The notes under the pieces are model-generated. The model did not search any database. It was not told the DNA's origin and saw only the letters and a program-made list of their open reading frames with translations. A program made the translations under genes and the position numbers. A stretch of 63,493 nt of DNA, the filler included, from Octopus bimaculoides (lineage: Eukaryota), in NCBI RefSeq assembly GCF_001194135.2. It is 9 parts of 8 records of this genome, joined end to end, with 100 filler letters (N's around TTAATTAATTAA, not from the genome) between each part and the next. Parts side by side here need not be neighbours in the genome. Positions count along the whole stretch, not along the records: positions 7,033 to 22,535 come from NC_068996.1; 8 more parts are not named here. One strand, written 5' to 3'. Below, piece after piece: positions 13,139 through 22,535 of this stretch. The number at the start of each line of letters is the position of its first letter. Positions within the stretch are counted from its first letter, which is position 1.

Positions 13139-13848
13139 TGTCTTTTTTTTCTTCTTTCTTCAAATTTTCTTCCATTTCTCGCCGAGTGTTTTCCGTACAC
13201 CTAGGGCAGAGAAACTCGTTGTATGCATTCCCAGTTTACACGTGCAAATTCACAGGTAAAACATGTATTTAAGAAAACAAAAAAAAAATTCATGAATGGA
13301 TGTTGTTTTCACAGCGATAATGCTCTTCTCAGTACATGAGTCGTTCCAGTTAGCACGATTTTTTTGCATTTCCTGTAGGGATGGTANNNNNNNNNNNNNN
13401 NNNNNNNNNNNNNNNNNNNNNNNNNNNNNNNNNNNNNNNNNNNNNNNNNNNNNNNNNNNNNNNNNNNNNNNNNNNNNNNNNNNNNNNNNNNNNNNNNNNN
13501 NNNNNNNNNNNNNNNNNNNNNNNNNNNNNNNNNNNNNNNNNNNNNNNNNNNNNNNNNNNNNNNNNNNNNNNNNNNNNNNNNNNNNNNNNNNNNNNNNNNN
13601 NNNNNNNNNNNNNNNNNNNNNNNNNNNNNNNNNNNNNNNNNNNNNNNNNNNNNNNNNNNNNNNNNNNNNNNNNNNNNNNNNNNNNNNNNNNNNNNNNNNN
13701 NNNNNNNNNNNNNNNNNNNNNNNNNNNNNNNNNNNNNNNNNNNNNNNNNNNNNNNNNNNNNNNNNNNNNNNNNNNNNNNNNNNNNNNNNNNNNNNNNNNN
13801 NNNNNNNNNNNNNNNNNNNTTATACCATTTGTCAGCAGTTTTGAGAAG
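13139..13848 (-). mobile_element. R4/Dong-clade LINE 3' fragment (RLE domain end and 3' UTR), spanning an N gap
   Basis: LLKTADKWY before the gap and KIVLTGTTHVLRRALSL* after it (stop at 13309-13311), then a 3' UTR ending in (TAA)n. Confidence 0.75.
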
Positions 13849-14131
13849 CCCAACGCCGAATCTCGTCGGCCGCGCCGGTCGTCGAGAGCTGTGGCGCAAG
13901 GGTCGTACACGGTCGATCGTTTCGCCCGGCTAGGTTCGGAGTCCCCTCGATCGGGGCTGCCCAGAGCGGGTGCCAGGCCCATTCGGAGCCGGCGGCGATT
14001 GGCGGTGTTTCTTTTCGGCCCGAGAGTCGGGTTGCTTGGGAACGCAACCCAAAGCGGGTGGTAAGCTCCATCCAAGGCTAAATACGGGGACGAGTCCGAT
14101 AGCCGACAAGTACCGCGAGGGAAAGTTGAAA
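13845..14131 (+). rRNA. Dispersed 28S rRNA 5' (D1-region) fragment, about 290 bp, non-functional
   Basis: Contains conserved LSU core sequence AGCCCAACGCCGAATC...GAGTCGGGTTGCTTGGGAACGCAACCCAAAGCGGGTGGTAAGCTCCATCCAAGGCTAAATAC...CCGATAGCCGACAAGTACCGCGAGGGAAAGTTGAAA. Both ends are abrupt and there is no ITS2 or other rDNA context. Confidence 0.9.
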
Positions 14132-14165
14132 CAACACACAGCTCATCACAGCCCATAACACCACA
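14130..14165 (-). mobile_element. 36-bp terminus of the same LTR family as 12311-12599, inverted
   Basis: Reverse complement tgtggtgttatgggctgtgatgagctgtgtgttgtt versus 12320-12355 tgtggtgttatgggctgtgatgaactatgtggtgtt: 33/36 identical. Confidence 0.7.
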
Positions 14166-14354
14166 CTTATTTTGAAGGGAATTTTAAATACTCACAGGAT
14201 ATTGTATATATTCCAGTCTTTTAGAGTTATTATTTTTTTTTTGTTCGCCGTTGTCCAGCTGGGTCATATTAGTGTTTCTATGGCTTTCAGCTACTGAATG
14301 GTCAGAGCAGCGAGGAACACGTCCATATTATTATTATTATTATCATCATCATCA

Positions 14355-14390
<36 letters not shown>

Positions 14391-14567
14391 NNNNNNNNNN
14401 NNNNNNNNNNNNNNNNNNNNNNNNNNNNNNNNNNNNNNNNNNNNNNNNNNNNNNNNNNNNNNNNNNNNNNNNNNNNNNNNNNNNNNNNNNNNNNNNNNNN
14501 NNNNNNNNNNNNNNNNNNNNNNNNNNNNNNNNNNNNNNNNNNNNNNNNNNNNNNNNNNNNNNNNNNT

Positions 14568-15905
<1,338 letters not shown>

Positions 15906-15935
15906 TTAACATACACGACATGTTGGGACGCTACC

Positions 15936-15964
<29 letters not shown>

Positions 15965-15967
<3 letters not shown>

Positions 15968-16324
15968 GTTATTTTATGTTTGACTTTTGTTTTGCATTTG
16001 TACAAGTTGGATCCAAGTCTCACCCAGAGACCTCAAGAGACAAGTTAGAAGTTCATGTAGGTGTTATGCCTAGGGTACCATATATTTGGATTTGTACATT
16101 TGGATTTGTACTAGAGAATGTTTAAGAAACCATAAGAAAATTGTGTTTGTTTTAAAATTTGAGATCACATAGACAGTATTTTACGTAGGATATGGGCAGT
16201 TCCTATGAGCACTATCTTTTGAACTTCAGCCATTTTGGGGTTTTCTGGTATCTGAGCTAGGTAGTAATCAGCCCGTTTCGCTGTCATTCCCAGGGCACCT
16301 ATGACAATAGGTATTGTTTTAGTC

Positions 16325-16325
<1 letters not shown>
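15965..16325 (-). mobile_element. R4/Dong-clade LINE, short 3' fragment
   Basis: Same 3' UTR as 15167 (ccaagtctcacccagagacctc) and ORF end EVQKIVLIGTAHILRK. (TTA)n on both sides. Confidence 0.85.
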
Positions 16326-16390
<65 letters not shown>

Positions 16391-16639
16391 GTAGTAGTAG
16401 TAGTAGTATTAGTAGTAGTAGTATTAGTAGTAATATTAGTAGTAGTAGTAGTATTAGTAGTAGTAGTAGTAGTTGCAGCAGCAGCAGCGGCAGCAATTCT
16501 ATATTAAATGACGTGAATTCAATGAGATTTTAGTTCGAATTCTGCCAATTTTCCTTCTATATCCTGTTTATCGAAATTCGATCAAAGATATAAATCATTA
16601 AATGGAATAATTTATTACTTCACTATGATATAGAGGAAT

Positions 16640-17900
16640 AGGCTTAGCCCGACCACGGTCTTTGTAATCTGATGCAGATTCAGAGGGAATTAACTTTCTT
16701 CCTGAACGTCTGAAAATTTGGTGGTGGTAGAAAAAGACATCCTGCGAGGCAACAGTAGATGTGCAATGAAAATAGCAAGTAGAAACTGGCATAGGGGTCA
16801 TTGCGGAACCTATGGATTAAACACAATATGGATGATGGGTCAAGAAATAGCGTGTGAATTTGGAATTACCTAAATGGAGGTGTCCACCAAAAGGTCCAGT
16901 CCTTTCTGCAGTCTTGTGGCTTGTATGCATCATCGATCTTGCAAGGAGCTATGCCAACAGAGTTCGAAGCTTCTGATAAGACCTCTTATACTTGGTATGT
17001 CAAAGGGCAGAGAGCAAACTAATACGGATCACTTCTTCCTGGCGTTAAGAAGGGGTTTCTTAGGGTTAATAGTTGTATTTAAACAAAAGAGAAAAGTTAG
17101 AGAAGCATCGATGTTACTCCCAAAGCAACAAGACGTGGGAGTGAAAGGTTTTCTCTGAGGGAGAAATATGACAGGGTGGAGCAAAATCCGAAAAAGGCGG
17201 AGCTGAAAAAAGCAGGTAACCAACTGGAGAAAAGCACAAAAGGCAGGCCAGTGTTGAAAACAGTGGAATAAAGTCGTCAGAGAATTATGTTCCACAGGGA
17301 GCGAAAGGCTTAAGTAAACAAAAGAAGAGGATCGGTTAACCCCCCCCCCAAAAAAAAAACAAAAAAAACTGACAGCTGTAGTAGAATAAAGAAAGCCAAA
17401 AGGACGAGGCATCATGTTTGGCTAGATATGCGTTTTGGTCAGTGACTTCGTAAAAATCAATCCAGTTACATTTAGTTATTATTTTGTTGAGGAAAAATGG
17501 TGGTGGATATATTCAAAATGTCACTGAGTACAGTAACAGCCCTGTCACAATTGTGAGTGTCGTATTTCACCATGGCACTTACCAAAGTGGTTCTGAAGTG
17601 GAGAAGTAATTTTGGGATTGCTTAGGAATTCCCCTCTCCTTGACAATGGACACTGGTATATGTAATAATTGGGTAGAGGAAGGAAGGAAAGAAGGTGAGT
17701 GCTTAAACTGGAGTGTGGTGTCATTTACGAATAACTGACTGTTGATGGAGGTGAAGATAAAAGGATAGTCGATATTTACGATGGAATTGATGGTGTGTAT
17801 AAAGTGAGGAGCCGCCGGAGAACATCAGAGAGAACAGAGTACCGGTGATAATGGGCTCCATAAGAACATGCCACAATTGCGTTATTTGACAAGAAGACGT
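16640..17900 (-). mobile_element. Highly degenerate CR1/Jockey-group LINE RT remnant (tentative)
   Basis: Weak translated motifs only: VEHNSLTTLFHCF (cf. VWH..L..KL), GSNIDASLTFLFCLN (cf. GS.L.P.LF..FIN), LFVNDTTL (cf. FADDTTL), FQTFRKKVNSL*. Confidence 0.4.
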
Positions 17901-17924
17901 AGATCCAAGAGATGAAAGAGAGAG

Positions 17925-17957
<33 letters not shown>

Positions 17958-17993
17958 TCTAGCTGATAGACAAGCAGTTTTGTTTTATATATG

Positions 17994-18047
<54 letters not shown>

Positions 18048-18218
18048 CACACTAAAAAATNNNNNNNNNNATATATATATATATATACACACTAAAAAAT
18101 GTATGTATAAATCCACAAACACAGTCACACATCTATGCATATAGATGACTATACATATACATATATATATATACATACACTTACACACACTCACACATAT
18201 ATACATATAGATGACTAT

Positions 18219-18277
<59 letters not shown>

Positions 18278-19023
18278 NNNNNNNNNNNNNNNNNNNNNNN
18301 NNNNNNNNNNNNNNNNNNNNNNNNNNNNNNNNNNNNNNNNNNNNNNNNNNNNNNNNNNNNNNNNNNNNNNNNNNNNNNNNNNNNNNNNNNNNNNNNNNNN
18401 NNNNNNNNNNNNNNNNNNNNNNNNNNNNNNNNNNNNNNNNNNNNNNNNGTGAAATAGATACATATATACAAACATGCATACATGCACTTATACTTATTCA
18501 CTTATATTTTTTTCGGTTGTTTTTGTTTTTCTTATTTGAATTTTGATTTACTTCGAATTAGAAAAAATATTTATCTACTTGTGATCTTCTTAAGTTTCGT
18601 ATGTAAAAATAATAGTCAAACAAATTGACAATTTTCTTTTTATTTTCTTAACTTTATTTGGAAACATGAGATACAAGTGAAAATGTTTTCAATTAATTAA
18701 CAAGTTCATAATTTAGCCATAGGTGTATAGAAGACAAGATATCTTTTATTCAGGAACTATCTGGAATGGTATTTGAGGAGATAAATCAATGTTTAGCTTA
18801 GTTACATTATCAACCGCCGACACCTTCCATTGTTTATATTTTCATTTCTTTAATGGATCTGGTTATTTCAAAAGCTTGGCTCACTTCAAAATATTCAACT
18901 ATTATTTAATACAAACAAGGGAAAATCAACTCAGACATACGAACTTGTACACAGTCACTAGCCTCCCTCAAACAATCGAATGTAAAGAAATACACACACT
19001 GACACAAATACTCAGCACACACG

Positions 19024-19060
<37 letters not shown>

Positions 19061-19061
19061 C

Positions 19062-19408
19062 ACAAGGATATCCAGAGGTAATGCAGTACGATCGTTTCAT
19101 GCAACTCCATTTAATTGAACAATGCAATCATTACATCAATTTAAAATGCAGAGCAATCTTTAGCTGCACAAAGACATATAATTTAAATTAAATTAGAACA
19201 GATGGACACATTAGTATAAATATATCTAAAATCTCCAAGAAGTTAAGGAGATAAACAAAGAACATGTTGTCTCACTCCAGTTTAGAAGTTACTCTAAACT
19301 GTGCAGCTGAAGATTGCTCTGCATTTTAAATTGATGTAATGATTACATTGTTCAATAAAATGGAGTTGCATGAAACGATCGTACTGCATTACCTCTGGAT
19401 ATCCTTGT
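19062..19408. mobile_element. Fold-back/MITE element with 109-bp terminal inverted repeats
   Basis: 19062-19170 versus the reverse complement of 19300-19408: 106/109 identical, with a 129-bp spacer. Confidence 0.9.
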
Positions 19409-19540
19409 TGCTTATTTTGATTTTAATCACCTTACTTTGAAATTGTATGGATAATACCGTACTAAATTCTGGTGCCTCAACTTAAGTACCATATTCATCT
19501 GAATCTAAATTTTTGCTGAACTCATCTACTATACCCAAAG

Positions 19541-19574
<34 letters not shown>

Positions 19575-19926
19575 TGTATGTATGTATGTATGTATGTATG
19601 TATNNNNNNNNNNNNNNNNNNNNNNNNNNNNNNNNNNNNNNNNNNNNNNNNNNNNNNNNNNNNNNNNNNNNNNNNNNNNNNNNNNNNNNNNNNNNNNNNN
19701 NNNNNNNNNNNNNNNNNNNNNNNNNNNNNNNNNNNNNNNNNNNNNNNNNNNNNNNNNNNNNNNNNNNNNNNNNNNNNNNNNNNNNNNNNNNNNNNNNNNN
19801 NNNNNNNNNNNNNNNNNNNNNNNNNNNNNNNNNNNNNNNNNNNNNNNNNNNNNNNNNNNNNNNNNNNNNNNNNNNNNNNNNNNNNNNNNNNNNNNNNNNN
19901 NNNNCACACACACGCACACACACACA

Positions 19927-19957
<31 letters not shown>

Positions 19958-20041
19958 GTATGTGTACTTCGAGACATTTTTCGCAGAGGCAGTTATAATT
20001 GTCCCTCGTTATTGTAATTTTAGTATATCATAACTAAACAG

Positions 20042-20185
20042 GGTGGCGAGCCGGCAGAATCACTAGGACTTTGCCTTTCATCCTTTCAGGGTCGCTAGAT
20101 TAAGTACCAGTTGCGTACTGGGTCGATCTAATCGACTGGCTCCTCCCTCAAAATTTCGGGCTTTGTGCCTAGAGGAGAAACGAGT
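20042..20185 (+). mobile_element. SINE family B, internally deleted
   Basis: Head ggcgagccggcagaatc and body actttgcctttcatcctttc..taagtaccagttgcgtactgg, shared with copies at 27483, 41913 and 53657. Confidence 0.75.
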
Positions 20186-20259
20186 ATATCATTACTAATC
20201 ATCTGATAAGCTGACTTGCCAACGTTTTTATATTTTGTCATTCCAGATTGAAGTAATAA

Positions 20260-21380
20260 CACTTTGAACACACCTGATGAAGCTCTGCTTGTCGCAGCTC
20301 ACTGGTTTGCAGAATACAGCCAGGACGTTTGCAAGTTCGATAGACAATGAAGTTTTGTGTTAAACTGGGTAAAACAGTTACAAAATCTTATGAAATGCTT
20401 GAGAGGACTTACGGATTAAGATGTACGAGCCGAGCATCTGTTCTTCGTTGGTCCAAGTGCTTCAAGGACAATGAAGAGAAAGTAAGAGACGATGTGAGAG
20501 ATGGAAAGGGGTGGAGAGAGAGTTGGTTGAGAAGATTCGTTTGAGAAAATACTGGATGATGACCTTTGTGTTTATACAAAGAGAATGCAGGAGTGCCTGT
20601 GTGGTAAGAAGCTTGCTTCCCAATCACATGGTTCCGGGTTCCGTCCCACTGCGTGTCACCTTACCCAAGTGTCTTCTATTATCGGCTCGGGCCGACCAAA
20701 CACTTGTGAGTGGATTTGGTAGGCGGAAACTGAAAGAAGCCCGTCGTATCACTTGACAACCGATGTTGGTGTGTTTACCACCCCCTTAATTTAGCGGTTC
20801 GGCATAAGTGACCGATGGTATAAGTACCAGGCTTACAAAGAATAAGTCCTTGGGTCTATTTTATTCGAGTAAAAGATGATGCCTCAGCATGGCCGCAGTC
20901 AAATGACTGAAACGATTAAAAGAACAAAAGAATAAAAGAATATACTTTGGAATTAGTGTTACAACTGAACATAGAATTATTCATAAAGATCTGAACATGC
21001 ACAAAATTTGTGCAACCAGGGTGCTCGGGTACAAGCATCCTGATAACCGACTACTTCACAGAGATGAGCATCAAAAAAGTCCTTCACCCTCCCTACAATC
21101 CAGACCTTACTCCCTTTGGCTTTTGGTCGTTCCCTAAATGGAAGGAGAACTTCAGGGACAGCAGTTTTGAACATTAAGGAGGCCATGACGAGGGCCCCGA
21201 ACATCTTCACTTTGAAGGATTTCCATGGGGGTTTTCATGAAGTGGCTGGGGGCGCTACAACAAATACATTTATGTCAGCGCATCCTACTTTGAAGTAGGA
21301 AATTAGAGTTTTGTACTTCTTTGAAATTAATAAATGTCACACCTGAAAATGTCTCAAAACTTCAAGAATGCACCTTGTAT
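20260..21380 (+). mobile_element. Mariner fossil, internally deleted and interrupted by a SINE
   Basis: KFCVKLGKTVTKSYEML..SRASVLRWSKCFK (HTH), then after the SINE HKDLNMHKICATRV and HPPYNPDLTP (YSPDLAP motif). TIR-like end aatgcaccttgta. Confidence 0.8.
20586..20940 (+). mobile_element. tRNA-derived SINE family A, near full length
   Basis: Head gcaggagtg.ctgtgtggtaag..ggttccgggttccgtcccactgc and tail catggccgcagtcaaatgactgaaac. At least 8 copies in the window. Confidence 0.85.
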
Positions 21381-21530
21381 ATATGCGTGTATATATACAC
21401 GCTACACACATACGATGATTACGTCATCTTGTCAGATGTTAGCCGTCTCACATCTAACCTGATTGTTATGATTTACTTCCATACATGCATGTGCGCGGAC
21501 ATGACTTTACAGGCCGGCTAATGACATACA

Positions 21531-21750
21531 TACGAGGGGTCCTGAAAAGTTCCTGGCTTTAAGGGTGTCGCGAAAAGCATTGCTGAAGGCCCAACCTTCC
21601 GAGTTCTTTTACAGGGCTTAGAAAAATTGAAGTACCGCTGCAATAAGTGTGTGAGTCTCAGAGGAGAATATGTTGAATAAAATCATAATTAACTTATCGT
21701 CCCTTATTTTGTTTTAACTAAAGCCAGGAACTTTCCAGTACCCCGTCGTA
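21531..21750 (+). mobile_element. Mariner-derived MITE, 220 bp
   Basis: About 30-bp TIRs (tacgaggggtcctgaaaagttcctggcttta / taaagccaggaactttccagtaccccgtcgta) with TA ends. Retains the transposase tail LEKLKYRCNKCVSLRGEYVE*. Confidence 0.85.
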
Positions 21751-21764
21751 GTATCAAGCAGAAA

Positions 21765-22250
21765 TGACATCTGTTATTTTGTGCCTGCACAGAATTAATT
21801 TCATGTGTTAGTGGTAGTTGTTGTTGATGATGAACCTGGAGGTGGCGTTTTAGACCAGGATTGGTCTTGCATGTCTTGTTGCACAGCGGACATGTAGTAG
21901 GGCCTGGAGGTGCCGGCAGTGCTGTCACACGATCTATCTATGCCCTCTGATTCTTATGAAACTTCAGGTGGTTCACATACCCTCATTTGCCGAGAAGAAC
22001 ACGTCAAATATTAAAGTTCTAGTTATCTGTCTTACAAGTGAGTCCTAATTCTTCTTTCCATTCATCCAACATTTTACATACTGACATAATTGTTGTTCCC
22101 CAATTTGAGAGATCCAGTTCTTCCTCCCTCAAATGATTTTCATACCCTCCAGGTTCTCCATGATGCTGTCTTAAAACCTTGTGGCCTTTTTCCTTGAACA
22201 TATTTACCAATTCACCCAAGAAAATTTTCTTTCGGAGCCTCTCAACATTT
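21765..22250 (-). mobile_element. RTE-type LINE 3' remnant (post-RT region and terminal C2H2-like finger)
   Basis: ERLRKKIFLGEL (cf. RLPKKI.YGEL) followed downstream by CPLCNKTCKTNPGLKRHLQVH. RTE ORFs often end in such a finger. Confidence 0.55.
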
Positions 22251-22497
22251 ATGTACACCCCCACCACACATATGTATATGTATATGTTTATATACATATA
22301 TATGTATATGTATATGCATATATATATATATATATTCAAATGTTTTTTACCGAAAAAGGTTTTTTCATACCGAGCTACCCGGCAAAATTGTTAATTATTA
22401 ATTTTATTACTAATTGACGATTCCCTGCCCTGCATATCTATATATATATATATTCATATAAATATATATGCATATATATATGTATATATATACATAC

Positions 22498-22535
<38 letters not shown>

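What the first reader, a model, noticed from the sequence alone, without database searches (positions are those of the whole stretch)
13139..14325. Three-part chimera: LTR terminus + antisense 28S rRNA + Dong LINE 3' end, bracketed by (TAA)n
Seen: the minus strand reads (TAA)n, about 160 bp of unique sequence, 36 bp of LTR terminus (14165-14130), about 290 bp of antisense 28S D1 (14131-13845), Dong RLE coding end (LLKTADKWY...LRRALSL*), 3' UTR, then (TAA)n. The three sources abut with no filler. Known: LINE reverse transcriptases can switch templates to cellular RNAs, but such chimeras usually carry the cellular RNA in the same sense as the LINE. Inference: this is either a one-off multi-template capture or a non-autonomous Dong derivative carrying an antisense-rRNA cassette. 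If transcribed it would give RNA complementary to the 28S 5' end.
Basis: partly seen in the sequence, partly recalled or inferred. Interest (0 to 1): 0.7.

Follow-up and report, generated by a model that had tools for sequence, protein, structure and literature searches.

The report
Truncated Dong LINE with inverted 28S patch
A broken copy of a Dong-type jumping gene, sitting in a long (TAA)n microsatellite of what looks like a cephalopod genome, appears to carry a 289-base piece of 28S ribosomal RNA in reverse orientation at its front end; this is a known kind of by-product of LINE insertion, and here it rests on a 571-base contig between two assembly gaps.

Summary
Partly confirmed, and ordinary in kind.

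**What holds**
- 13843-14131 is 28S rRNA, sense on the + strand (Rfam E 3e-35; 80% identity to cuttlefish 28S).
- 13139-13386 (minus strand) is a real Dong-type ORF end plus 3' UTR, abutting (TAA)n.
- (TAA)n lies on both sides.

**What does not hold**
- The chimera sits on a 571-bp contig between two N gaps.
- Only 23 nt (13820-13842, KTADKWY) link the 28S piece to Dong. They fit the expected place in the ORF, but not significantly (P about 0.07).
- The "LTR terminus" is a 36-nt inverted copy (33/36) of window 12320-12355, 1.77 kb away. I found no LTR pair, target-site duplication, primer-binding site or gag-pol.

**The gap**
One collinear Dong copy needs about 13-16 nt here, not 433.

**Setting**
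13040-16500 is one (TAA)n tract holding four 5'-truncated Dong-like copies. 13843-14325 is its only identified foreign DNA.

**Best reading (0.5)**
A one-off patchwork made while copy A's 5' end was joined. Sense 28S rRNA was copied from the second DNA end, as in twin priming. 28S/LINE-1 chimeras and antisense ncRNA/LINE-1 chimeras are already described.

**Rivals**
Assembly artefact, two separate events, or a mobilised family. None of my searches found a second copy, but no collection holding this host's genome DNA was available.

The parts
13052..13139 (-). (TAA)n microsatellite, written (TTA)29 on +, with some TTG units. It is the target and tail at the 3' end of Dong copy A.
   Evidence: TRF; sequence
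13140..13311 (-). 3' UTR of Dong-like copy A. Its end shares the motif CT(C/G)GG(C/T)GAGA..TGGA...AAAAG(A/T)CA with copies C and D.
13312..13386 (-). C-terminal 25 codons of the Dong-like ORF (YHPYRKCKKIVLTGTTHVLRRALSL) plus the stop codon; the contig ends at 13386.
   Evidence: tblastn E 2e-4; HMM 24 bits
13387..13819 (.). Assembly gap of 433 N. A single collinear Dong copy needs only about 13-16 nt here (1 mod 3).
   Evidence: gap arithmetic
13820..13842 (-). 23 unassigned nt reading KTADKWY plus AA on the minus strand. Compatible with the Dong ORF (family GLIKKGTEKY; copy C KGADCY) but not significant.
   Evidence: P about 0.07; for the boundary
13843..14131 (+). 289-nt fragment of 28S rRNA (D1 region plus conserved core, Rfam LSU positions about 102-370). 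Sense on +, antisense to Dong. Core helices and CpGs are intact.
14130..14165 (-). 36-nt block TGTGGTGTTATGGGCTGTGATGAGCTGTGTGTTGTT (minus strand), an inverted copy of window 12320-12355 (33/36). It overlaps the end of the 28S fragment by 2 nt (AA on the + strand).
12320..12355 (+). Nearby twin of the 36-nt block, and its possible template. It is bounded by the 9-nt repeat TGTGGTGTT at 12311, 12320 and 12347.
14166..14325 (-). 160 nt with no match anywhere. On the minus strand: 83 nt, then A10, TAATAA, then 61 nt. It may be a mosaic of further captured pieces.
14326..14390 (-). (TAA)n/(TGA)n microsatellite running into the next gap (14391-14566). It is probably the tail of the upstream Dong copy B.
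14567..14969 (-). Dong-like copy B: 5'-truncated, carrying the CCHC zf-RVT region. Its 5' end is three tandem 22-nt copies of its own KLEQ-coding segment. Its 3' part is lost in the gap.
15172..15936 (-). Dong-like copy C: CCHC, RHD, PD..D..K endonuclease region and ORF end, with frameshifts and stops, plus a 3' UTR; (TAA)n on both sides.
15975..16324 (-). Dong-like copy D: the last 48 codons plus the 3' UTR, with (TAA)n on both sides.

Best explanation
This is a real, single-locus patchwork at the 5' end of a 5'-truncated Dong-type (R2/R4-like, TAA-specific) LINE insertion. Dong copy A started target-primed reverse transcription in a (TAA)n tract at 13139 and was copied only as far as the last ~45 codons of its ORF. 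While that truncated end was being joined to the other side of the break, extra DNA was synthesised from other templates. These were 289 nt of the cell's most abundant RNA, sense 28S rRNA, copied from position ~370 back to ~102; a 34-36-nt stretch copied from DNA 1.8 kb away; and possibly more, the 160 nt. The inverted orientation is what priming from the second DNA end predicts (twin priming with a foreign RNA, followed by a jump onto the Dong first-strand cDNA), so no antisense rRNA is needed. What is shown: the identity, limits and orientation of the 28S piece; the Dong 3' end; the (TAA)n setting; and the local twin of the 36-mer. What is inferred: that the 23 nt at 13820-13842 are Dong, that all parts arrived in one event, and the order of template use. 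No function is implied; it is most likely inert.
For: (1) 13040-16500 is one expanded (TAA)n tract holding four 5'-truncated Dong-like copies, all on the minus strand and each followed by (TAA)n. The only identified DNA in it that is neither Dong-like nor (TAA)n is 13843-14325, lying directly 5' of copy A; the adjacent 23 nt (13820-13842) are unassigned. That argues this block came in with copy A rather than being old flank. (2) The 23 nt between the 28S piece and the gap are placed best at the family position 12-13 residues upstream of where the left contig stops. They are on the right strand and in phase. The nominal gaps sum to 609 N, against about 650 nt needed if copies A and B are both collinear. 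(3) The microsatellite on the contig has the same polarity as the rest of the array, which supports the drawn orientation. (4) Orientation fits twin priming: 28S position ~370 faces the upstream target side and position ~102 faces the Dong 5' break. (5) Precedent exists. There are 18 28S/L1 chimeras with a median 28S segment of 269 nt (range 50-482), 17% of them antisense. 5S, tRNA and U5 chimeras are mostly antisense and attributed to twin priming (10.1101/2025.02.02.635956). Tripartite chimeras arise from double template jumps (PMC2104539). (6) Messy 5' ends recur in this array: copy B begins with three tandem 22-nt copies of its own sequence. (7) No junction shares more than 2-4 nt of sequence between its two sides, so none is a k-mer-overlap misjoin. 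(8) The family is Dong-like: a full-length relative (L002) has RVT_1, zf-RVT and a restriction-like C-terminus and lies between (TAA)n on both sides. Dong elements, including one from a snail, target TAA microsatellites (PMC3812793).
Against: The Dong identity of the 23 nt is not significant (P about 0.07). The chimera lies on a 571-bp contig bounded by two N gaps whose drawn lengths cannot both be right. No reads, no second assembly and no empty site could be examined. The 28S piece could equally have been captured as DNA. The 36-mer differs from its neighbour at 3 of 36 positions, all in the last 13 nt. The 160 nt has no identified source. One-event origin cannot be tested by target-site duplications inside a microsatellite.
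Confidence: 0.5

Rival explanations
1. Assembly or scaffolding artefact. The 571-bp contig is either chimeric (rDNA reads joined to repeat sequence) or is a real sequence placed in the wrong locus, so no Dong/28S chimera exists at this site.
For: The contig lies between two gaps. Both of its ends are repeats: (TAA)n on one side and a possible Dong segment on the other. The two gap lengths are each inconsistent with the elements they interrupt. The 28S piece shows no decay: core helices are paired and many CpGs remain, as expected if it came from true rDNA reads. None of my searches found the junctions elsewhere.
Against: The junctions share at most 2-4 nt, far below any assembler's k. Three independent misjoins in 571 bp would be unusual. 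Microsatellite polarity, strand, phase and the summed gap length all fit the drawn placement. The 36-mer's twin lies 1.77 kb away in the same scaffold, which is hard to explain if the contig belonged elsewhere.
Confidence: 0.25
2. Two or more separate events. An orphan 28S fragment, with the 36-mer and the 160 nt as filler, was first captured at a double-strand break in the fragile (TAA)n tract by end joining, in random orientation. Dong copy A later inserted next to it, and its truncated 5' end happened to be joined at the 28S edge.
For: Isolated 28S fragments of about 300 nt occur elsewhere in cephalopod DNA. Cuttlefish locus L004 7446-7751 is a 306-nt 28S piece next to (GT)n with no Dong, 96% identical to another copy. 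Short templated insertions copied from nearby sequence, direct or inverted, are typical of polymerase-theta end joining (general knowledge). A possible 4-nt TGAA microhomology exists at the 28S/36-mer junction (and sequence). The tract has taken at least four Dong hits.
Against: It requires the later Dong 5' end to land exactly on the 28S boundary with no (TAA)n left between them, whereas copies C and D have (TAA)n directly at their 5' ends and copy B only tandem copies of its own sequence.
Confidence: 0.17
3. A non-autonomous, Dong-mobilised element about 770 nt long: a 194-nt head, an antisense 28S cassette and a Dong 3' tail. It would exist in several copies and could give RNA antisense to the 28S 5' region.
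For: The block is bracketed by (TAA)n like every Dong insertion in the tract and ends in a Dong-family 3' UTR whose terminal motif is shared with copies C and D. rRNA-derived SINE modules are known (SINE28 and 5S-derived SINEs are cited in 10.1101/2025.02.02.635956).
Against: There is no second copy in the 15.5-kb piece. No junction-spanning protein or DNA turned up in any collection I could search. The head has no tRNA, 5S or 7SL-like promoter module. The 36-mer has a local twin, which suggests a locus-specific origin. Bracketing by (TAA)n is trivial inside a 3.4-kb (TAA)n tract.
Confidence: 0.05

Closest known systems
28S rRNA/LINE-1 and other ncRNA/LINE-1 chimeric insertions (U6, U5, 5S, tRNA), formed by template switching or twin priming
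   Same: A 5'-truncated LINE carries a fragment of an abundant non-coding RNA fused at its 5' end. The 28S segment is 289 nt, against a reported median of 269 nt (range 50-482). Antisense orientation is documented (17% of 28S/L1; most 5S, tRNA and U5 chimeras) and explained by priming from the second DNA end.
   Different: The LINE here is a restriction-like-endonuclease, microsatellite-specific element (Dong/R4-like), not the APE-type L1. The host is an invertebrate, probably a cephalopod. A different 28S region is involved (5' D1 rather than the ~3636-4115 region common in primates). There are further pieces upstream, the 36-mer and the 160 nt. No target-site duplication can be read inside (TAA)n.
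Tripartite chimeric retro-pseudogenes from double template jumps (Magnaporthe MGL LINE; human examples), PMC2104539
   Same: Three or more unrelated sequences are fused head to tail with no filler at the 5' side of a LINE 3' part.
   Different: In those cases all parts are in the same sense and are flanked by direct repeats that prove a single event. Here the rRNA part is inverted, one part has a DNA twin 1.8 kb away, and a single event cannot be proven.
Dong (Bombyx mori), DongAg, DongBg: TAA-microsatellite-specific non-LTR retrotransposons of the R4 clade
   Same: The 3' end abuts (TAA)n. The ORF is single, with RT followed by a CCHC knuckle and a restriction-like endonuclease in full-length relatives. 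Several truncated copies are stacked in one (TAA)n tract (PMC3812793).
   Different: Clade membership was not tested by RT phylogeny against named Dong sequences. Copy A keeps only about 32 codons plus its 3' UTR.
Templated filler insertions at end-joining junctions (polymerase-theta type) and L1 5' inversions by twin priming
   Same: A short stretch (34-36 nt) is copied in inverted orientation from sequence about 1.8 kb away on the same molecule, with junctions of 0-4 nt microhomology.
   Different: The copy is 33/36 rather than exact. The enzyme responsible, whether host polymerase or the LINE reverse transcriptase jumping onto DNA, cannot be told from sequence.

Membership tests
Dong / R4-clade TAA-specific non-LTR retrotransposon | The 3' end of the element abuts a (TAA)n microsatellite on the sense strand | tested here: met
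   Copy A's 3' UTR ends at 13140, directly on (TAA)29 at 13139-13052. The same holds for copies C and D and for the full-length relative L002, which has (TAA)n on both sides.
Dong / R4-clade TAA-specific non-LTR retrotransposon | ORF C-terminus homologous to the CCHC plus restriction-like endonuclease region of a single-ORF RT element | tested here: met
   13386-13312 scores 24 bits against the tail HMM of 96 relatives. Relatives carry RVT_1 and zf-RVT and match the CCHC/RLE region of R2 structures weakly (E 0.04-0.14).
Dong / R4-clade TAA-specific non-LTR retrotransposon | The RT domain groups with Bombyx Dong/R4 in a phylogeny | not tested
   No named Dong or R4 reference sequence was available in the tools, and copy A has no RT left.
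LINE / cellular-RNA chimeric retro-insertion | The cellular RNA copy is fused directly to the truncated 5' end of the LINE | tested here: inconclusive
   The 28S piece abuts 23 nt that fit the Dong ORF at the expected place, but only with P about 0.07, and then an N gap follows.
LINE / cellular-RNA chimeric retro-insertion | The whole chimera is flanked by one target-site duplication or one target, showing a single event | not testable with these tools
   The target is a microsatellite, so duplications are unreadable. No empty site or orthologous locus was available.
LINE / cellular-RNA chimeric retro-insertion | The captured segment corresponds to mature RNA, with a size in the known range | tested here: met
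   The 289 nt lie wholly inside mature 28S (model ~102-370) with no ITS. The reported range is 50-482 nt. An RNA origin rather than a DNA origin is not proven.
   The only match is 36 nt at 12320-12355, inverted. There are no long direct repeats and no TSD or PBS by inspection. No retroviral-type Pfam domains occur among the ten ORFs scanned, most of them 77 aa or longer. A TG start is present, but the 9-mer TGTGGTGTT is tandemly repeated across the supposed end.
Non-autonomous LINE-dependent element (SINE-like) | Several dispersed copies sharing the same internal junctions | tested here: inconclusive
   None was found in the piece, in 5.8 billion predicted proteins, by exact ORF look-ups or in metagenome and prokaryote contigs. 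The host genome itself could not be searched.
Non-autonomous LINE-dependent element (SINE-like) | A 5' head with an internal pol III promoter (tRNA, 5S or 7SL derived) | tested here: not met
   Apart from the 28S match there is no credible Rfam match in 13000-14400 at E<=1; the one other hit is a microsatellite-driven false match (CrcZ, 21 bits against a 95-bit threshold). ARAGORN finds no tRNA.

The most novel reading that the evidence does not exclude
The block 14325-13139 is one copy of a Dong-mobilised, non-autonomous element family that carries an antisense 28S D1 cassette. Its transcripts would be complementary to the 5' end of 28S rRNA and could feed small-RNA or rRNA-surveillance pathways in a cephalopod.
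Probability: 0.04. Interest if true: 0.6.

Novelty: new member of a known kind. Interest (0 to 1): 0.25.

Why it matters
If real, it would show that restriction-like-endonuclease, microsatellite-targeting LINEs in molluscs make the same inverted ncRNA chimeras described for mammalian L1. That would extend second-end priming and template jumping to another LINE clade, using a clean example with three or more templates. It has no evident consequence for the host. Its practical value is as a caution: a 571-bp contig between gaps, with 23 nt as the only link, is not enough to claim a chimera. The idea of an antisense-rRNA cassette should not be carried forward without read-level support and a genome-wide copy count.

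Tried and rejected
1. I searched 5.8 billion predicted proteins with the junction-spanning antisense ORF and with a six-frame concatenate of 13820-14330. Only spurious rDNA gene models from the cuttlefish Acanthosepion pharaonis came back (65-79% identity); none crossed a junction.

2. Exact look-ups of three junction-spanning ORFs and two other window ORFs found nothing on record. The source assembly and species could not be identified this way. The octopod/cephalopod guess rests on P0068 (Octopus bimaculoides, near-identical to the copy C/D C-terminus) and on cephalopod-type 28S substitutions.

3. Exact DNA scans of JGI metagenome contigs and GTDB genome contigs gave 0 hits, both for the two junctions and for a cephalopod-type 28S core. 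These collections are not expected to hold host DNA, so this says little.

4. The cuttlefish protein P0001 seemed to show a 28S fragment ending at nearly the same 3' boundary. I rejected this: the gene model is spliced (its range is 16.5 kb), and the underlying 28S piece runs about 70 nt further.

5. I considered reading 12320-12355 and 14130-14165 as the terminal inverted repeats of a DNA transposon. I rejected it: there is no target-site duplication, the 'interior' is unique DNA plus a microsatellite plus Dong, and the (TAA)n/Dong array continues outside the right arm.

6. The LTR reading found no support (see the membership test).

7. I looked for an HDV-like ribozyme or any other structured RNA in the 194-nt head. 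Rfam shows nothing there. The whole-piece Rfam scan gave only microsatellite-driven miRNA false hits, plus one sub-threshold snoRNA match in the CA-repeat region.

8. I scored the join with 0-11 X residues against the tail HMM to fix the gap length. The HMM aligns only the right-hand fragment, so it cannot discriminate between gap lengths. The estimate of 13-16 nt comes from residue spacing in relatives.
Full report
**1. What is in the sequence**

The piece 7033-22535 is rich in microsatellites and broken by five N runs. The finding lies on a 571-bp contig, 13820-14390, bounded by gaps at 13387-13819 (433 N) and 14391-14566 (176 N).

On the + strand this contig reads as follows:
- 23 unassigned nt (13820-13842);
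- 289 nt of 28S rRNA in sense (13843-14131);
- a 34-36-nt block (14130/14132-14165);
- 160 nt with no match anywhere (14166-14325);
- (TAT)n (14326-14390).

The 28S call is solid. The Rfam LSU_rRNA_eukarya model matches at about positions 104-370, with 139.7 bits and E 3.2e-35. BLASTN against a cuttlefish 28S locus gives 80% identity over 290 nt, E 1.5e-71. The fragment carries cephalopod-type substitutions in the conserved core, and the core helices still pair.

The three-way alignment with two cuttlefish copies fixes the limits. On the 5' side, cuttlefish reads ..GAACCGG|GAGAAGCCCAACGCC and the window reads ..CAGTTTT|GAGAAGCCCAACGCC. On the 3' side, GGGAAAGTTGAAA is followed by AGAACTTTGG in 28S and by CAACACACAG in the window.

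**2. The setting: a stack of Dong-like copies in one (TAA)n tract**

Reading the minus strand from 16500 down to 13040 gives (TAC/TAA)n and then four copies in turn. Copy D is 16324-15975, copy C is 15936-15172 and copy B is 14969-14567, running into the gap. Each of copies D and C is followed by (TAA)n. After the gap come (TAA)n, the chimera, and copy A's ORF end and 3' UTR (13386-13140). The tract closes with (TAA)29.

A composite of these fragments finds 537 relatives in marine invertebrates. An Octopus bimaculoides protein (P0068) is 86-88% identical to copies C and D. This, together with the 28S substitutions, suggests a cephalopod host.

A near-full-length relative (L002) has a single ORF with RVT_1 and zf-RVT. 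Its C-terminal region aligns weakly to the CCHC/endonuclease part of solved R2 proteins. It lies between (TAA)14 and (TAA)11.

Dong elements, including one from a snail, are the known TAA-microsatellite-specific non-LTR elements (PMC3812793). 'Dong-like' is therefore justified by target and architecture. Clade placement by RT phylogeny was not done.

**3. The gap, tested first**

Left of the gap, the minus strand reads YHPYRKCKKIVLTGTTHVLRRALSL*. This is a clear family C-terminus at 24 bits.

The two L codons (and the preceding G) are the 28S bases GAGAAGCCC, which leaves KTADKWY plus two bases. The family profile places this peptide best at the expected spot (GLIKKGTEKY; copy C has KGADCY). 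The score is not significant, though: -0.6 bits by HMM and P about 0.07 by a position-restricted PSSM test.

In relatives, 12-13 residues separate this spot from (Q)KIVL, and 8 of them are present here. One collinear copy would therefore need about 13-16 nt in the gap. That is 1 mod 3, as is 433, which has a 1-in-3 chance of happening anyway.

The other gap errs the opposite way. Copy B stops at residue 282 of 432 of its relative and needs about 636 nt to reach its (TAA)n, but only 176 N are drawn. The two gaps sum to 609 N against about 650 nt needed. The simplest reading is that the contig is in the right interval and orientation but sits about 420 nt further left than drawn. Microsatellite polarity agrees with the orientation.

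Continuity across the gap is plausible but not demonstrated. The alternative is that the gap hides the rest of one copy, a (TAA)n run, and a second truncated copy.

**4. The 'LTR terminus'**

The block 14165-14130 (minus strand) matches window 12320-12355 (+ strand) at 33/36. The first 23 nt are exact, E 3e-9. It is thus an inverted copy of sequence only 1.77 kb away in the same piece.

Nothing else supports an LTR. There is no second long copy, no TSD or PBS, and no retroelement domain outside the Dong fragments. At 12311-12355 the 9-mer TGTGGTGTT occurs three times and brackets the block, so 12320 is not a clean element end.

A dispersed repeat with a twin this close by chance is unlikely unless the repeat is extremely abundant. 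Local templating is the more economical idea. This could be fold-back or jump synthesis during repair, with a possible TGAA microhomology at the 28S side. It remains unproven.

**5. Mechanism**

The DNA at 13843-14325 is the only identified sequence in the 3.4-kb tract that is neither Dong-like nor (TAA)n, and it sits exactly 5' of copy A. I therefore favour a single messy 5'-end resolution of copy A (confidence 0.5).

The orientation is informative. 28S position ~370 faces the upstream target side and position ~102 faces the Dong break. That is what results if the second DNA end primes reverse transcription on sense 28S rRNA and the product is then joined to the Dong first-strand cDNA. This is twin priming with a foreign RNA.

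A recent survey found 18 28S/L1 chimeras (median 269 nt, 83% sense). It also found that 5S, tRNA and U5 chimeras are mostly antisense, and attributed this to twin priming (10.1101/2025.02.02.635956). Multi-part chimeras from double template jumps are also known (PMC2104539). Copy B's 5' end, three tandem 22-nt copies of its own coding segment, shows that untidy 5' junctions recur in this array.

**6. Rivals**

- *Assembly artefact (0.25).* The contig's isolation, its repeat ends, the wrong gap lengths and the undecayed 28S all allow it. Against it: the junctions share only 2-4 nt, the placement is consistent in strand, phase, polarity and summed gap length, and the 36-mer's twin lies in the same scaffold.
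- *Separate events (0.17).* An orphan 28S piece could have been captured at a break in the microsatellite, followed by a later Dong hit. An isolated 306-nt 28S fragment next to (GT)n in cuttlefish (L004) shows such orphans exist without Dong. However, this reading needs the later Dong end to land exactly on the 28S edge.
- *Mobilised family (0.05).* No second copy was found anywhere I could search, there is no SINE-type head, and the 36-mer looks locus-specific. Genome-wide copy number was not testable here.

**7. Verdict**

In kind, this is a new example of a known phenomenon, a LINE/rRNA chimeric 5' patchwork, in a different LINE clade and phylum. There is a substantial chance that it is an assembly problem. 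I found no evidence for transcription or function. Interest is low to moderate (0.25). Read-level validation and a genome-wide junction count would settle it.

Noticed in passing
window 13040-16500: One expanded (TAA)n/(TAC)n tract holds four 5'-truncated Dong-like copies, all on the minus strand and each followed by (TAA)n. Copies C and D are about 90-94% alike over their shared ORF end and 3' UTR (repeat families D9, D11, D12).
   Followed up: yes
window 14901-14969: Copy B's 5' end consists of three tandem 22-nt units (caaactaaaactagaacagca) that encode the element's own KLEQ segment. This is a 5'-terminal triplication suggestive of repeated template slippage or jumping.
   Followed up: partly
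window 13387-13819 and 14391-14566: The two gap lengths are individually inconsistent with the elements they interrupt (433 N where about 13-16 nt would do; 176 N where about 636 nt is needed). Their sum (609) is close to the sum needed (about 650). The 571-bp contig is probably misplaced by about 420 nt within the correct interval.
   Followed up: yes
window 12311-12355 vs 14130-14165: A 36-nt inverted repeat pair (33/36) lies 1.77 kb apart. The left copy is bracketed by the 9-mer TGTGGTGTT (three occurrences). Whether it is a local templated copy, a dispersed repeat end or a TIR remnant is unresolved.
   Followed up: partly
window 11325-11710: The sequence looks by eye like a tRNA-derived SINE (GGCTCAGTGGTTAGGGCAGCGGACTCGCGGTCATACGATCGCGGTTTCGATTCCCAGACC...), ending in (CAA)n. 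ARAGORN reports no tRNA here.
   Followed up: partly
window 20347-21300: Degenerate mariner/Mos1-type transposase remnants: an HTH_48 hit (E 5e-6) and, by eye, a ..HPPYNPDLTPFGFW.. DDE-tail-like ORF.
   Followed up: partly
window 21704-21928 (-): A short ORF with a C2H2-type zinc finger (CPLCNKTCKTNPGLKRHLQVH), possibly the N-terminal remnant of another retroelement. The Pfam hits are weak, and all but zf-met (21.3 vs 21.2 bits) fall below their cut-offs.
   Followed up: no
window 19062-19170 and 19300-19408: A 109-nt inverted repeat, 97% complementary, with arms 129 nt apart. It is a fold-back or MITE-like structure next to a gap.
   Followed up: no
L004 7446-7751 (Acanthosepion pharaonis, CAHIKZ030000190.1): An isolated 306-nt 28S fragment (roughly Rfam positions 135-440) sits in non-rDNA context, directly followed by (GT)n. 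It is 96% identical to the 28S-like copy in L003. Two 5S rRNA genes lie in the same 22-kb locus. At least five cuttlefish contigs carry gene models built over 28S-like sequence.
   Followed up: partly
L002 1-4848 (ENA metagenome scaffold ERZ23491290): A near-full-length Dong-like element (RVT_1, zf-RVT, endonuclease-like C-terminus, about 380-nt 3' UTR) lies between (TAA)14 and (TAA)11. Its 5' end is GC-rich and looks structured (ATCCGCCCAGGGGTTACCTCTTCGGAGG...). I did not check it for an HDV-like ribozyme.
   Followed up: partly
window 7033-22535: The Rfam scan at the E-value threshold gives many below-threshold mir-297, mir-466, mir-3149 and mir-1277 matches on TA/CA microsatellites, plus one below-threshold snoRNA match (sno_ZL1, 7172-7359). 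These are compositional false positives.
   Followed up: yes
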